In this document: positions 21,582 through 34,388 of the stretch, in pieces
How positions within the stretch are numbered: the first letter of the stretch is position 1
Layout: each line of letters opens with the position of its first letter
DNA from: Fimbriosthenelais zetlandica
Taxonomy: Eukaryota
Assembly: GCA_977030845.1 (NCBI GenBank)
Contig: OZ365113.1
Coordinates: 33,852,001-33,916,000, forward strand
Direction of reading: 5' to 3'
DNA length: 64,000 nt
Translations under genes and position numbers: made by a program
The notes under the pieces: model-generated
The model's input: only the letters and a program-made list of their open reading frames with translations
Told to the model about the DNA's origin: nothing
Database searches by the model: none

Positions 21582-21739
21582 TCAAGTTTTGTCAGCACTT
21601 TTTTGGTTTTCCATCTCCGTCTCTTCGGTCACTTGGGAACGCTTCCACTTGTAGAATTTATACAAAACCAGATCGAAAAATTCAAATAATGAGATGACAC
21701 TTCCTCCGAGTAGCAGGCCCAGGTATCCCCCAACATCAC
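21582..21739 (-). CDS. DEG/ENaC last exon: TM2, GGS selectivity filter, short tail, TGA stop
   Basis: SDVGGYLGLLLGGSVISLFEFFDLVLYKFYKWKRSQVTEETEMENQKSADKT*. Confidence 0.92.
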
Positions 21740-24700
21740 CTAGAAAATAAAAATAACACTAAAATGGGGTTAAAAAAGGTTTCGTTATAAATCCCCTCCC
21801 AACAATGCATTTTACATAGAAGTTGTTAAAAAAATATAGGTTCCTTTTAATACTACAAATATGTTTTAATACTCACTTAAAAAGAGATCTATCGTGTATG
21901 TACGGATTTGTTTCACGTCTTGGTATTTTAGTTGAGCGAAATAGATGTCCACAGCAATAAAGTTCTTCCTGAATGAGGGGAAATATATTCAGAACTGTAT
22001 ACATTTATTTTAACTTCTAAGTTTTAAAAATTTGATTTGAAAATCCAAGGAAGAAAACTTACTTAAAGAATTCATCATCTAGACGGGTCTGTTGTATGTA
22101 TTTTTTATACTGATCTCCAGCTCTGGATAATAAACCTTTGATGTGGGCCCTTTTCCTCATCAAAGCTTGTGTGAGTTCAGATACAGCCTGATGGATTGGC
22201 TTATTGTGCCACACCACCAACTCCTCCAGAACCCTCGATGGGTTAGAAGCCAAAAACTGCTTCACTGATCCCATTGGAAACTTGTCCTCATCAAATATAA
22301 CAATTTCTGGTATCTCCACATTGGCCTTTGGGTAGTAAAATATCTTGAGTGATTTAAATGTGGAAGACTTATAATTGTTACCAAGGAAAAACGCGAGTTT
22401 GATTTCGACGTTTGCTAATGTTAAATATGTGTCCTCAGCTAGAGTTTGTAGCTGGATCAAGTGTTGCTTTATTGGATCAACAAAACTTGATGTAATGCTA
22501 GACACGAAGTAATCCACCTCCTCCAATGTTTTTGTTTGTTCTTCAAGACTGAGGAAATTGTTAAGGTCTTCCCATGTTAGGTACGCTGTGCGGAAGCTCT
22601 TTAAGTTTTTGGCAACTTTCTCTTGAAAATTCATCAGTGGTAGAGATGTATCGTAATAGTCCAATATGTTGTCAATGCTACCTTTTTTGTTAAAGGACAT
22701 TAACATTGTATTTACTCTTAGGATTGCATCTGCAAAGTTTTGCTTCCAAGATGCAATCGTCTCAAGTAAATTTGTATATTCCTCAGTGCATGGTAGGAAC
22801 TGTCTTGTTGTCATTTCCAAACGAATTATGTTGGTGACAAATTCTTGATTTGTTTTAAATTCCACACTGTCAAACTGTTGCTGGATTATGTCAAATCCAT
22901 GTCTAAGATTTAACAAACGTCCCTCACATTCATTACTAAACAGTTTCTGTGGTAGAAGCAGATGCATATCAGACCCTTCATCCACACCACTCATGATGGC
23001 AGCAATGGTATGGTTCAAATGAAAATATCCCTCTTTCAAAGCTAGAATTTGATTTCGAAGTAAAATTTCTTCCATCGTGCTGTTTGCACTTGGTTGTGGC
23101 ATAGTTGATAGTTGGTGCAATAGTCTGAGGCTAATGAGGAATCCCTGCAGCATTCCCTTTAGACTCCTGATGTTCAATCCATAAAAATAGTCAAAGGCAT
23201 TGTATAGATCTTCCACTTTCCATAATAACGTGTTGGATAAATCAGCAGAGAGTACATGATCAAGAAAACTTTGCATGACGAGGTGCATTCTCATGATTTG
23301 TGAACCTACTGGAGACCAAATCCTATTTCTTGTGAAAGCGAGGATGTCTTTGTATGCAACGTCCAGAGCTGAAAGTTTGTCCAAATCTTCCAGGAATGTG
23401 TCGGAATTGCTTCTGTAGTTGGTTTCTTGTATATCCAAGTATTTCGTTAGCAGGTGATCCAGGTTACCCTGGACAAGTTGACCAATGTTTAAGCTGGATA
23501 TGGCCCCATATGACAGCTGGCTTTCATATACCTTTCGGAAACAGGGTTCGATGCAGCCACAGTCAGAAAAAGATATGTCTGCAAAACCTGAAAGGATCCA
23601 AGACACTATTTTAGAACAACAAAAAGGTATGGTGGCATCTTTGCTCCTATCATATAGAAAAGTCATTGGTTGACTGAAGGCCGATATGACTTACCGGTCC
23701 TTTCAATAGTCAAGGCACAGTTGAGGTACTTGGACACATTACATATTGGCGGATTAACTGAAATGTCCAGAAAGATTGACTTTGACATCATTGAAATTAA
23801 AAATAATCATTATTAATGGAACATCACTGCAATACATTAAAATGTATTGGAGGACGAGGCAAATAGATCCAACACTCACCAGCACTGCAATACATTGTCT
23901 GCTTATACAGCAGGTCTTATTTGAAAGAAAAAATGTTTTAAATAATTTAAATTTCATTGATCTTTTGAACGCTTACATTCGTTGAAGCCAGGCATGTAAC
24001 TGTCCCTACAGCCACACATTTGAAGCATAGCCTGGGTCTCACACTCTCTGACACAGGAAGAAAACGTATAGGTATTGGTATAGTTGAGTGTTGCTGTACC
24101 ACAGGATCCCCAGGGTGGTCCTAGACTCTCCGTCTGTTAAAATATGGAGGTTAAAGAACTAAAATAAACTTACATTCCCTGTATGTATGCTACAAAAAGG
24201 CAGGAATAACATGGGTAGGTCAGTCAATGCATTCAATAAACACGAGTTTATAATTGCATTACTCCAGAAAAGAAATAAGATAATTTCTCATAATTGCACT
24301 GTTAACTTAAAAAAATAACCAGAAAACTATGTATAGAGACAGATCAGAGATTGTGCCATGGTTTGTATTCACCTGGGTCAGCTTAACTGCCACCAGGGCG
24401 TGACTTCCTGGACCGACAGAAAAGCCCAGGTCTCGGACAAAAGGCACCTCCTGCTGATCGTGCAGGAATATCTGCAAGAAAAAGTCTTTGCGTATTAGAT
24501 GAACATTAAATATGGATATTCAATATAATGTATGGACTCCATTCCCAGTATATTCACAAACGACATATTTATGACACAACAGCAGCGGATCCAGTATTTT
24601 GGAAAGTGGTGCACTGTCCAGAACTGAAGGCAATTACTTTAAGGTCTTACTTTAATTATAGGTAGCCAAAATGACCAAAGGACCTGCAGGGATATTTTAC

Positions 24701-33700: not shown

Positions 33701-34388
33701 GACTCACCGTCGGTAGGAGAACTATACTTGTGAATTGAATTGTTGAAGGTATCTTCGATGACATCGTAGACACCAATTTTGAAGGCTTTAGATGCCCTGA
33801 AATCGTATGAATAATTTATTGATGCAGCAATTGTTTTGCTTCCTAAAATTGATATAGTAATCTGTAAAAATACTCACCTGAAAGTATTTTGATTGCAAAG
33901 GGTGACAGCAGGAAAGGGAAGTTCTTGAGTGTATATAATTTCAACATTCACAGCTTTTGGATGAGACGAAAGACTCAAAATTTGTGTGATGACAAAATAG
34001 AGGAAGCCAGCCAGAGCTGCCAAGGTTACCAATGCCCATAGCAACCTGAAAATACGAACCACAATAATATCATTTGAGATATAAAATTCAGGTATACGAA
34101 AATGATGGGGAAATGATATATGAGGTATTGTAAATAATCTCATGTTCTAGACCTTCTAATGACAGGTAGGAATTTAAAAAAATACAAGGAATGTTTTCGG
34201 TGAGATACATTATTTATTAAGCCATGTTCACTGACATCTACAAGTTAAATGTTTTTAAAATAAATATAACTCAAATATTGTCTACCTCCTTGAAAAGTGA
34301 GAAGTTTTGTCGGCAACATATCGGATACCGTGAAATGTTGTTTCTTCTGAGAAATCCACAAGAATTTTTTTCAATTTCTTGGAGGCAC
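21582..34388 (-). CDS. DEG/ENaC (amiloride-sensitive) superfamily channel with multi-domain finger insertion and long helical knuckle insertion, ~1,920 aa, 27 exons; start exon upstream not fixed
   Basis: Family motifs appear in the correct order: ETTFHGIRY, TM1, FPAVTLCNQN, LGHQVEDLIHGCSWGG..C, TDYGLCHTFN, GLRLLLNIEQ, LHDQQEVP..GF.V.PG, YTFSSC..EC....CGC, C.C..PC...Y, NFIAVDIYF..L.Y, SDVGGYLGLLLGGSVISLFEFFD. Exons: 34388-34286, 34045-33878, 33796-33708, 33074-32823, 32308-32171, 31089-30948, 30782-30571, 29962-29696, 29483-29373, 29240-29097, 29020-28634, 28336-28211, 27900-27799, 27681-27313, 27249-27136, 27002-26580, 26348-26202, 25839-25729, 25292-25232, 25019-24898, 24783-24701, 24471-24373, 24133-23977, 23757-23695, 23578-22063, 21968-21877, 21739-21582. 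All junctions are GT-AG and frame-consistent. Confidence 0.9.
22063..23578 (-). CDS. DEG/ENaC 1.5-kb exon: end of thumb/beta10 plus ~460-aa helical insert
   Basis: The 535-aa ORF in the track. The exon begins DISFSDCGCIEPCFRKVYESQLSY (acceptor could also be 23587) and ends RLDDEFF|K, joining NFIAVDIYF. Confidence 0.85.
25379..25689. mobile_element. MITE-like element with imperfect CAGGGGCGGATCCAG-type terminal inverted repeats
   Basis: Left TGGTGGCGGATCCAG (25379-25393), right CTGGATCCACCCCTG (25675-25689). Intronic. No target-site duplication seen. Confidence 0.5.
26202..26348 (-). CDS. Channel exon: LDL-receptor class A module 3 (divergent)
   Basis: CPGYVCSGKFYKCLDRFLLCDGKRDCWLGDDELPPYC. 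Confidence 0.75.
26580..27249 (-). CDS. Channel exons: MAM-like domain 4 (27249-27136, 27002-26580)
   Basis: LDCEFYSGEVCNY...SW ... LSPTL....HCV ... ISAIKAEPGQC. Divergent MAM pattern. Confidence 0.65.
27313..27900 (-). CDS. Channel exons: MAM-like domain 3 (27900-27799, 27681-27313)
   Basis: FDCDFSESFICGY.....GW ... ILSSAW....PSCLQI ... YWRSTFV ... LNNVNISHETC. Confidence 0.7.
28211..28336 (-). CDS. Channel exon: LDL-receptor class A module 2
   Basis: CWPDEVLCDSGSECVSMTSLCDGVVHCQDFSDEDGAVC. Confidence 0.85.
28634..29240 (-). CDS. Channel exons: MAM domain 2 (29240-29097, 29020-28634)
   Basis: CNFESPKICGY...QW...LDHTTQTAKGHYLYLDS ... ECLEFH ... MAIDDVKLRHDC. Confidence 0.85.
29373..29483 (-). 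CDS. Channel exon: LDL-receptor class A module 1
   Basis: [36 protein letters not shown]. Confidence 0.9.
29696..29962 (-). CDS. Channel exon: kringle domain
   Basis: ECRMTVLGTEYLG......G.PCLPW ... SYCRNPDDNPNGPWCFT ... CSIPYC. Confidence 0.92.
30571..32308 (-). CDS. Channel exons: MAM domain 1 (32308-32171, 31089-30948, 30782-30571)
   Basis: CDFEGGRPC...W...GPNRDHTKIYGSYLYLD ... PLCMDISY ... W ... GHVALDDVKIDRC. Confidence 0.85.
32823..33074 (-). CDS. Channel exon: PAN/apple-like domain
   Basis: CQEDDFDIQRG...ITKKLCRMLCV....TCNSFMYDNYMKYCDIF...SDVYVRKRC. Has the C...C..CxSFxY...C spacing and the terminal YxRxC typical of PAN. Confidence 0.75.
33878..34388 (-). CDS. Channel exons: pre-TM1 HG gating motif (34388-34286) and TM1-beta1-beta2 (34045-33878)
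   Basis: KKILVDFSEETTFHGIRYVADKTSHFSRR|LLWALVTLAALAGFLYFVITQILSLSSHPKAVNVEIIYTQELPFPAVTLCNQNTFR. Confidence 0.9.

What the first reader, a model, noticed from the sequence alone, without database searches (positions are those of the whole stretch)
21582..34388. Giant receptor-like DEG/ENaC channel (~1,920 aa) with two independent large ectodomain insertions
All DEG/ENaC landmarks (HG, TM1, FPAVTLCN, thumb cysteines, TM2 GxS) are present and in order. The protein is nevertheless roughly three to four times the length of typical ASIC/ENaC/FaNaC subunits (~500-700 aa) because of a finger-position domain cassette and a knuckle-position helical insert. In a trimer this would raise nine domains per subunit plus a helical tower above the pore. 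It may be a channel directly gated by proteins, matrix tethers or proteases. I know of no characterised family member with this architecture, but I cannot search to confirm novelty.
Basis: partly seen in the sequence, partly recalled or inferred. Interest (0 to 1): 0.92.

Follow-up and report, generated by a model that had tools for sequence, protein, structure and literature searches.

The report
Giant sodium channel with built-in binding arm
This animal gene very probably makes a DEG/ENaC sodium-channel subunit about three times the usual size. A chain of nine protein-binding modules and a 470-residue helical domain sit in its outer part, and a second species has the same layout, so the channel may carry its own tether or ligand sensor.

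Summary
On the minus strand of 21582-34388 I built a 27-exon, all GT-AG model of 1,916 aa. It has exactly two hydrophobic segments and all the DEG/ENaC landmarks: HG, FPAVTLCN, thumb cysteines and a GGS filter.

- **Insert 1, finger:** PAN, MAM, Kringle, LDLa, MAM, LDLa, MAM, a divergent MAM-like domain, LDLa and an acidic linker. The cassette starts and ends in intron phase 1 and adds a whole number of codons.
- **Insert 2, knuckle:** about 470 aa, all helical, in the same 1,525-nt exon as the CGCIEPC palm motif.
- **Second species:** an ENA contig carries the same modules in the same order on one strand, with the same intron phases at the junctions I checked.
- **Helical exon:** it has 29 homologue clusters. 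AlphaFold gives a confident helical-bundle model (pLDDT 85) with no convincing match among solved structures.

- a 165-nt intron inside MAM-1;
- a missed 63-nt thumb exon;
- the ATG exon is not found.

One transcript, channel activity and gating by the arm are untested. I found no paper describing this design. The scan had already noted paralogous giant channels on other pieces of this genome, so this is one more family member.

The parts
34286..34388 (-). Exon with the pre-TM1 HG motif (TTFHGIRY). It starts in phase 1, so an upstream ATG exon is missing.
   Evidence: The second species has the same phase-1 acceptor.
33878..34045 (-). TM1 and the FPAVTLCN post-TM1 motif.
   Evidence: Pfam ASC 9.6e-13. 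Best PDB matches ASIC5 2.1e-7 and FaNaC1 7e-6.
33708..33796 (-). First finger exon (ASKAFKIGVYDVIEDTF...PTD). It ends in phase 1. This is the upstream boundary of the cassette.
   Evidence: The equivalent exon in the second species also ends in phase 1.
32823..33074 (-). PAN/apple-like module, six Cys, phase 1-1.
   Evidence: PAN_1 0.0058 here and 5.3e-4 in the second species.
30571..32308 (-). MAM-1 in three exons: 32308-32171, 31089-30948 and 30782-30571. The 165-nt intron is 30947-30783.
   Evidence: MAM 3.9e-4 and 7e-5. Intron read from the sequence.
29696..29962 (-). Kringle, six Cys, phase 1-1.
   Evidence: Kringle 3.8e-14.
29373..29483 (-). LDLa-1, six Cys, with the DLSDE calcium motif.
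   Evidence: Ldl_recept_a 5.3e-11.
28634..29240 (-). MAM-2 in two exons: 29240-29097 and 29020-28634.
   Evidence: MAM 7.4e-6 and 1.2e-10.
28211..28336 (-). LDLa-2.
   Evidence: Ldl_recept_a 3.8e-7.
27313..27900 (-). MAM-3 in two exons: 27900-27799 and 27681-27313.
   Evidence: MAM 4e-6 for the C-terminal half. The N-terminal half shows only the CDFSESFICGY motif.
26580..27234 (-). Divergent MAM-like domain ('MAM-4') in two exons: 27234-27136 and 27002-26580.
   Evidence: No Pfam hit. An HMM built from MAM-1 to MAM-3 matches only its N-terminal motif. It is conserved in the second species.
26202..26348 (-). LDLa-3, six Cys.
   Evidence: Ldl_recept_a 5.1e-4, below the curated cut-off. Not detected in the second species.
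25729..25839 (-). Acidic, Gly/Pro-rich linker exon, phase 1-1.
   Evidence: The second species has an equivalent acidic phase 1-1 exon.
23977..25292 (-). Channel core, from the finger helix through palm and beta-ball to the thumb, in five exons: 25292-25232, 25019-24898, 24783-24701, 24471-24373 and 24133-23977.
   Evidence: ASC hits. The thumb exon matches ASIC1 at 2e-7.
23695..23757 (-). Small thumb exon (FNPPICNVSKYLNCALTIERT), missed at first, phase 1-1.
   Evidence: 68.8% identical hit in the second species. P0025 has MCNVTSYFDCLIGVED at the same place.
22063..23587 (-). Single 1,525-nt exon holding the palm motif CGCIEPC...LSYGAISS followed by the roughly 470-aa all-helical knuckle insert.
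   Evidence: ORF. 29 homologue clusters. AlphaFold2 pLDDT 85.2, pTM 0.75, all alpha.
21877..21968 (-). Last palm strand before TM2 (NFIAVDIYFAQLKYQDVKQIRTY).
   Evidence: 73.5% identical in L007.
21582..21739 (-). TM2 with the GGS filter, the conserved E and D, a short cytosolic tail and the stop codon.
   Evidence: ASC 1.3e-4. Aligns to ASIC1 [25 protein letters not shown].

Best explanation
This is one gene for a DEG/ENaC (ASIC-like) channel subunit of about 1,920 aa.

Shown or read directly from the sequence:
- TM1 acts as the signal anchor. Both termini are cytosolic, and the roughly 1,800 residues between the two membrane helices are extracellular.
- Exon shuffling put a block of modules into a phase-1 intron of the finger. 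The block is flanked by phase-1 introns and adds a whole number of codons. It reads PAN, MAM, Kringle, LDLa, MAM, LDLa, MAM, MAM-like, LDLa, linker.
- A separate helical-bundle domain of about 470 aa sits in the knuckle.

Inferred:
- The subunit forms trimers, alone or with its paralogues, and conducts Na+ through an intact pore (Ser at the degenerin position, GGS filter, conserved E and D).
- The finger arm binds an extracellular protein or matrix partner. Binding or pulling on it moves the finger against the thumb, which is the region that ligands and proteases act on in FaNaC, ASIC and ENaC, and this changes gating.
- The arm would therefore be a built-in version of the external tethers proposed for MEC-4 and ENaC.
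- The helical knuckle domain is a fast-evolving scaffold or second binding surface next to the arm.

I put the one-gene, one-protein reading at about 0.8 and the gating-arm mechanism at about 0.35.
For: Gene structure in the window:
- 27 GT-AG exons join into one open frame with all family landmarks in order.
- There are exactly two hydrophobic segments.
- Apart from the phase-2 intron inside MAM-1, the cassette exons are phase 1-1, and the flanking channel exons end and start in phase 1.
- All modules keep their cysteines: six each in PAN, Kringle and the three LDLa.
- No credible ATG-plus-signal exon lies between 33707 and 33075.
- The knuckle insert is in the same ORF and exon as the palm motif.

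Second species (ENA ERZ25767047, contig ctg38488):
- The order is collinear on one strand over about 28 kb: HG, TM1, PAN, MAM, Kringle, LDLa, MAM, LDLa, MAM, MAM-like, linker, finger, palm, thumb, big helical exon, TM2.
- Pfam confirms these modules independently of my model.
- Intron phases are identical at the four junctions checked.

Other relatives:
- L007, the closest relative, has the same exon layout around the big exon.
- The P0003 locus has a MAM-bearing ORF 9 kb upstream on the same strand.

Basis for the mechanism:
- The finger is the ligand site in FaNaC (bioRxiv 10.1101/2023.02.01.526556, title seen).
- Proteases activate ENaC (PMC9540061).
- Extracellular tethers are proposed for ENaC mechanosensing (PMC7958617).
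Against: - No RNA evidence is available. Because the cassette adds a whole number of codons between two phase-1 introns, an mRNA that skips it (33708 joined to 25839 or 25292) would also be in frame and would leave a short but plausible finger.
- The first coding exon was not found.
- PAN, LDLa-3 and the fourth MAM score below Pfam's curated cut-offs when taken exon by exon.
- No annotated full-length protein with the helical exon turned up among 1.84 billion representatives, so no independent gene model supports the join.
- Nothing here tests channel function or ligand binding.
- C. elegans EGAS channels, the nearest multi-module precedent, gave no current in oocytes (PMC10424705).
Confidence: 0.72

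Rival explanations
1. The cassette exons are optional. The main mRNA skips them (33708 joined to 25839 or 25292) and gives a channel of about 900 aa that keeps only the helical knuckle insert. The giant form is a minor or tissue-specific isoform.
For: The cassette is flanked by phase-1 introns and adds a whole number of codons, so skipping stays in frame. The skipped product would keep about 55 residues of finger helices. The second species seems to lack LDLa-3, so module number does vary.
Against: The cassette's cysteines and its module order are kept between two species that share only 20-60% identity. That argues it is translated and under selection. Inside this gene it can only be translated as part of the channel.
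Confidence: 0.25
2. The module cassette is a separate gene nested in an intron of an ordinary DEG/ENaC gene. The giant protein is an artefact of joining the two.
For: Chimeric gene models are a known source of false domain architectures (PMC3927609, title and abstract seen). There is no RNA evidence here.
Against: - No start exon with a signal peptide lies before PAN.
- No terminal exon is evident. The last cassette exons are phase 1-1 like the rest.
- The cassette is on the same strand and in the same phase as the host intron.
- The arrangement and the phases are kept in a second species, despite very different intron sizes and a retroelement insertion.
Confidence: 0.08
3. It is one protein, but the arm does not gate the channel. 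It anchors or clusters the channel at a matrix, cuticle or cell-contact site, or takes up ligands in the manner of MAM-LDLa receptors. Gating would be by protons, peptides or leak, as in ordinary family members.
For: MAM and LDLa arrays are typical of adhesion and endocytic receptors (my own knowledge of RPTPmu, MAMDC4 and MALRD1). The core is closest to ASIC5, ASIC1 and FaNaC.
Against: Nothing here speaks directly against it. The only hint the other way is that the insertion point lies in the finger, the gating-sensitive region, rather than at a terminus.
Confidence: 0.3
4. The locus is a decaying pseudogene or a non-functional duplicate.
For: The start exon is missing from my model. The genome holds many paralogues (earlier scan notes).
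Against: There are 27 exons with no stop or frameshift, all splice sites are canonical, 64 cysteines are kept, and the pore motifs are intact.
Confidence: 0.04

Closest known systems
ASIC/BASIC-type DEG/ENaC channels (ASIC1, ASIC5) and FaNaC
   Same: HG motif, TM1, FPAVTxCN, palm and thumb cysteines, and a TM2 with the filter and the E/D pair. The best solved-structure matches of the core exons are ASIC5, ASIC1 and FaNaC1.
   Different: Known members are about 450-700 aa. This one has about 1,010 extra residues of modules in the finger and about 470 helical residues in the knuckle. Its filter is GGS rather than GAS.
[quoted passage not shown]
   Same: They are DEG/ENaC subunits that carry extra extracellular protein-interaction modules, and their function is uncharacterised.
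   Different: The modules are EGF, not PAN, MAM, Kringle or LDLa, and no EGF hit was found here. I did not check where the EGF modules sit in EGAS. No helical knuckle domain is reported for them.
MAM-LDLa array proteins (MAMDC4/endotubin, MALRD1; also ALK and enteropeptidase), recalled from my own knowledge
   Same: MAM and LDLa modules alternate and are built from phase 1-1 exons.
   Different: Those are secreted or single-pass proteins with their own signal peptide. Here the array has neither a signal peptide nor a stop codon, and it lies inside a channel's extracellular loop.
AlphaFold DB models K1PHY3 ('Amiloride-sensitive cation channel 4-B', 678 aa) and R7T5W4 (654 aa, uncharacterised)
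   Same: They are the best structural matches to the helical insert (E 1.2e-4 and 1.6e-3; TM by query 0.48 and 0.34). This suggests other predicted channel models may carry a comparable helical domain.
   Different: Sequence identity is only 11-13%. Both TM-scores are below 0.5, so the same fold is not established. Both are short gene models without the module cassette as far as their length shows. Neither has been studied. The organism was not given by the tool.
External tether model of mechanosensitive DEG/ENaC (MEC-4 complex; ENaC N-glycan tethers, PMC7958617)
   Same: In both, an extracellular link between the channel's outer domain and the matrix is proposed to carry force.
   Different: In those systems the tether is a separate protein or a glycan. 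Here a candidate tether is part of the channel polypeptide, and that role is inferred, not shown.

Membership tests
DEG/ENaC (Pfam ASC, PF00858) | Pfam ASC profile match above the curated cut-off of 23.6 bits | tested here: met
   Single exons score 48.4, 30.0, 26.1 and 38.1 bits, covering profile positions 21-79, 154-191, 230-267 and 267-329. TM2 scores 21.6 bits at positions 430-454.
DEG/ENaC (Pfam ASC, PF00858) | Two transmembrane helices flanking one large extracellular loop | tested here: met
   A hydropathy scan of the 1,916-aa model finds only residues 36-54 and about 1862-1889.
DEG/ENaC (Pfam ASC, PF00858) | HG motif before TM1 and FPxxTxCN after it | tested here: met
   TTFHGIRY and FPAVTLCN are present and align to ASIC5.
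DEG/ENaC (Pfam ASC, PF00858) | Conserved thumb and palm cysteines | tested here: met
   CVRECETQAMLQMCGCRD...CNVSKYLNC...CGCIEPC.
DEG/ENaC (Pfam ASC, PF00858) | TM2 G/S-x-S selectivity filter with a small residue at the degenerin position | tested here: met
   The model reads FLSDVGGYLGLLLGGSVISLFEFFD against ASIC1 [25 protein letters not shown]. The degenerin-position assignment comes from my knowledge of ASIC numbering.
DEG/ENaC (Pfam ASC, PF00858) | Trimeric, amiloride-sensitive Na+ channel activity | not testable with these tools
   This needs expression and electrophysiology.
Giant finger-cassette DEG/ENaC subfamily (this genome's paralogues and the ERZ25767047 gene) | Same module order between TM1 and the finger helix, plus the big helical exon before TM2 | tested here: met
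   Collinear tblastn hits and Pfam hits in the second species, with matching phases.
Giant finger-cassette DEG/ENaC subfamily (this genome's paralogues and the ERZ25767047 gene) | All exons present in one mRNA | not testable with these tools
   No transcript data could be reached. The Logan contigs I fetched were genomic.
EGAS (EGF plus ASC channels) | EGF-like modules | tested here: not met
   No EGF family appeared in any exon scan.
Stand-alone MAM-LDLa receptors (MAMDC4/MALRD1-like) | Own signal peptide, and own membrane anchor or stop codon | tested here: not met
   No start exon lies before PAN, and no extra hydrophobic segment exists.
MAM domain (for the fourth MAM-like module) | Match to the MAM profile over the whole domain | tested here: inconclusive
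   No Pfam hit. An HMM built from MAM-1 to MAM-3 matches only the N-terminal 27 residues. The four Cys and the two-exon layout fit MAM.

The most novel reading that the evidence does not exclude
This would be a receptor-channel. Its own finger-borne adhesion and ligand-binding arm (PAN, MAM, Kringle, LDLa) would turn protein or matrix binding, or mechanical pull, directly into pore opening. The arm would be backed by a lineage-specific helical knuckle domain. It would be the first DEG/ENaC known with a built-in tether, and it has expanded into a multigene family in this animal lineage.
Probability: 0.3. Interest if true: 0.85.

Novelty: new variant of a known kind. Interest (0 to 1): 0.72.

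Why it matters
How force or large ligands reach the gate of DEG/ENaC channels is an old open question. The tether model for MEC-4 and ENaC relies on separate matrix proteins or glycans that are hard to pin down.

A channel with a candidate tether encoded in the same polypeptide, at the gating-sensitive finger, would allow a direct test: delete, swap or pull on the arm. It is also a clear case of exon shuffling into the loop of an ion channel. It adds an unstudied helical ectodomain whose AlphaFold model has no convincing match among solved structures.

If the arm only anchors the channel, the gene is still a new domain architecture, but of narrower interest.

Tried and rejected
- **ATG exon:** I scanned 34389-35640 for ATG followed by a phase-1 donor. 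Only weak donors (score 2.1 or less) turned up. Candidates beyond the upstream galactosyltransferase gene cannot be judged.
- **Nested start exon before PAN:** only 13-28-aa peptides without a signal-like core. Rejected.
- **Word-index search with the MAM-4 C-terminal exon:** no hit.
- **Word-index search with the helical-exon alignment:** returned only P0001 because of the candidate cap.
- **ESM Atlas by features for the big exon:** no usable result.
- **Atlas fold search:** only generic helical bundles, with TM by query 0.26 or less.
- **Foldseek against the PDB:** nothing below E 0.03.
- **VIA wide search:** four-helix-bundle sensor domains at Z up to 11.9 over residues about 122-283. That is below the tool's own caution level for helical folds, so I read it as a common arrangement, not homology.
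- **PDB sequence searches with two short pieces next to the insert:** empty.
- **Walking upstream of paralogue L001:** the listed neighbour gene did not translate without stops.
- **Contigs of ERZ26222911:** no DNA could be fetched.
- **L002:** at first it looked like a spliced transcript. It is genomic, with few introns.
- **Other copies and RNAs in the window:** no second copy of the gene and no Rfam family.

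
Full report
**What is in the window**

The stretch is animal DNA with short introns. All candidate exons lie on the minus strand.

Stop-to-stop frames and Pfam scans of single exon ORFs give this order:
- ASC: TM1 and FPAVTLCN, 9.6e-13
- PAN: 0.0058
- MAM in two halves
- Kringle: 3.8e-14
- LDLa: 5.3e-11
- MAM: 7.4e-6 and 1.2e-10
- LDLa: 3.8e-7
- MAM: 4e-6
- a MAM-like pair of exons with no Pfam hit
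- LDLa: 5.1e-4
- ASC again: 3.6e-7, 5.4e-6 and 1.2e-9
- a 543-codon ORF
- ASC TM2: 1.3e-4

**Gene model**

I scored GT and AG sites that keep the frame between neighbouring exons and joined them. Two corrections followed.
- The 519-nt MAM-1 exon contains a good donor and acceptor (CAG|gtactg ... tttcactag|G) around 165 AT-rich bases. Removing them gives MAM-1 a normal length of 164 aa.
- The thumb lacked two cysteines. A 63-nt exon at 23757-23695 supplies them. The homologue P0025 and a 68.8%-identical hit in the second species both confirm it.

The final model has 27 exons and 1,916 aa, and it ends at the stop codon at 21582. It has only two hydrophobic segments, 64 cysteines and 16 N-glycosylation sequons.

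The HG exon begins in phase 1, and I could not find the ATG exon. The second species has the same phase-1 acceptor at that point. The missing exon may lie beyond the intronless galactosyltransferase gene at 35645-36934.

**Is the cassette part of the channel?**

These points support one gene:
1. The finger exon ends in phase 1 at 33708, and the next channel exon starts in phase 1 at 25292. Apart from the phase-2 intron inside MAM-1, the cassette exons between them are phase 1-1. This is the signature of exon shuffling into a phase-1 intron.
2. No ATG exon with a signal-like peptide lies before PAN, and the cassette has no stop codon of its own.
3. PAN, MAM, Kringle and LDLa are extracellular, disulfide-rich modules. 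They fall in the extracellular loop, and their cysteines are intact.
4. The layout recurs elsewhere. Starting from homologues of the big exon, I walked along an ENA contig (ERZ25767047, ctg38488; loci L004, L005, L006).
   - tblastn with my model is collinear on one strand over about 28 kb, covering HG, TM1 (60% identity), PAN, MAM, Kringle, LDLa, MAM, LDLa, MAM, MAM-like, finger, palm, thumb, the small thumb exon, the big exon and the TM2 exons.
   - Pfam confirms the modules there independently of my model.
   - Intron phases match at the four junctions I read by eye.
   - Introns there are much longer, and one holds a retroelement. The arrangement has therefore survived long divergence.
   - That copy seems to lack LDLa-3.

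This does not prove a single mRNA. Because the cassette adds a whole number of codons between two phase-1 introns, skipping it would stay in frame.

**The knuckle insert**

The palm motif CGCIEPCFRKVYESQLSYGAISS and about 470 further residues share one exon, so this insert cannot be a mis-join.
- Pfam on homologues places the break after ASC profile position 391-414 and before 430. That is the knuckle.
- phmmer against 1.84 billion representatives found 29 clusters. All are ORF-sized calls of 575 aa or less from unannotated assemblies, and none is named.
- With these as an alignment, AlphaFold2 gives a confident all-helical model: pLDDT 85.2, pTM 0.75, helices up to 58 residues.
- Two cysteines are invariant across the alignment, which fits an extracellular disulfide.
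- Foldseek finds nothing in the PDB.
- VIA finds only generic four-helix bundles.
- The best AlphaFold DB matches are two unstudied models, one auto-named as an amiloride-sensitive channel. Their TM-scores are 0.48 and 0.34. This hints that comparable helical domains exist in other predicted channels, but it does not establish the same fold.
- In the closest relative (L007), the core exons are 74-79% identical to the window but the insert is only 39% identical. The insert evolves much faster than the core.

**The core**

The best solved-structure matches are ASIC5, FaNaC1 and ASIC1. The pore looks intact: Ser at the degenerin position, a GGS filter, and the E and D of the ELFD stretch.

**How it probably works**

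- Shown: the architecture, and its conservation in a second species.
- Inferred: a trimeric Na+ channel whose finger carries a binding arm.

The finger is where FMRFamide acts in FaNaC (bioRxiv 10.1101/2023.02.01.526556). Proteases activate ENaC (PMC9540061). Extracellular tethers are proposed for ENaC mechanosensing (PMC7958617). From these I infer that binding or pulling on the arm shifts the finger against the thumb and changes gating. Anchoring or clustering without a role in gating is a serious alternative.

**What is known**

I found no paper describing an ASC domain combined with MAM, Kringle, LDLa or PAN, or describing a knuckle helical domain. The nearest precedent is the C. elegans EGAS group, 'EGF plus ASC', which gave no currents in oocytes (PMC10424705).

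**Earlier scan notes**

The scan had already noted giant DEG/ENaC genes with the same cassette on other pieces of this genome, and knuckle inserts in further channels. One of those notes calls the animal an annelid. I could not check the species. This locus is one more member of that family. My comparative evidence comes from a different contig walk and agrees with those notes.

**Verdict**

The feature is real. It is very probably one gene, and it is a new variant of a known channel family. Its function is untested.

Noticed in passing
window 39972-42545 (-): A single 857-codon ORF with a Somatomedin B domain (1.9e-6) and a secretin/adhesion-type 7TM domain (4.3e-16). It looks like an intron-poor adhesion-like GPCR gene.
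   Followed up: partly
window 35645-36934 (-): An intronless 430-codon ORF with a Galactosyl_T domain (3.3e-29) and a signal-anchor-like N-terminus. It sits directly upstream of the channel's HG exon on the same strand. If the channel's missing ATG exon is further upstream, this gene lies inside the channel's first intron.
   Followed up: partly
L007 (Logan ERR14368245) 212-3339 compared with window 21871-24484: In the closest relative, the channel-core exons are 74-79% identical at protein level but the helical insert is only 39% identical. The insert is under much weaker or diversifying constraint.
   Followed up: partly
L002 (Logan SRR23372229) 2-454 and 519-1871: A more distant relative has its finger-to-insert region free of introns. 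A Pro/Ser/Gly-rich low-complexity ORF precedes it where the window has its acidic Gly/Pro linker.
   Followed up: no
L004 2178-3131 (-), inside an intron of the second species' gene: A reverse-transcriptase (RVT_1) ORF lies on the opposite strand, within the cassette region of the orthologous or paralogous gene.
   Followed up: no
window 54620-55597 (-): A 325-codon ATG ORF with no Pfam match.
   Followed up: no
ENA ERZ26222911, contig of 383,574 nt (no DNA held): Two different helical-exon homologues, P0002 and P0005, lie on the same contig. This suggests tandem paralogues in that species too.
   Followed up: no
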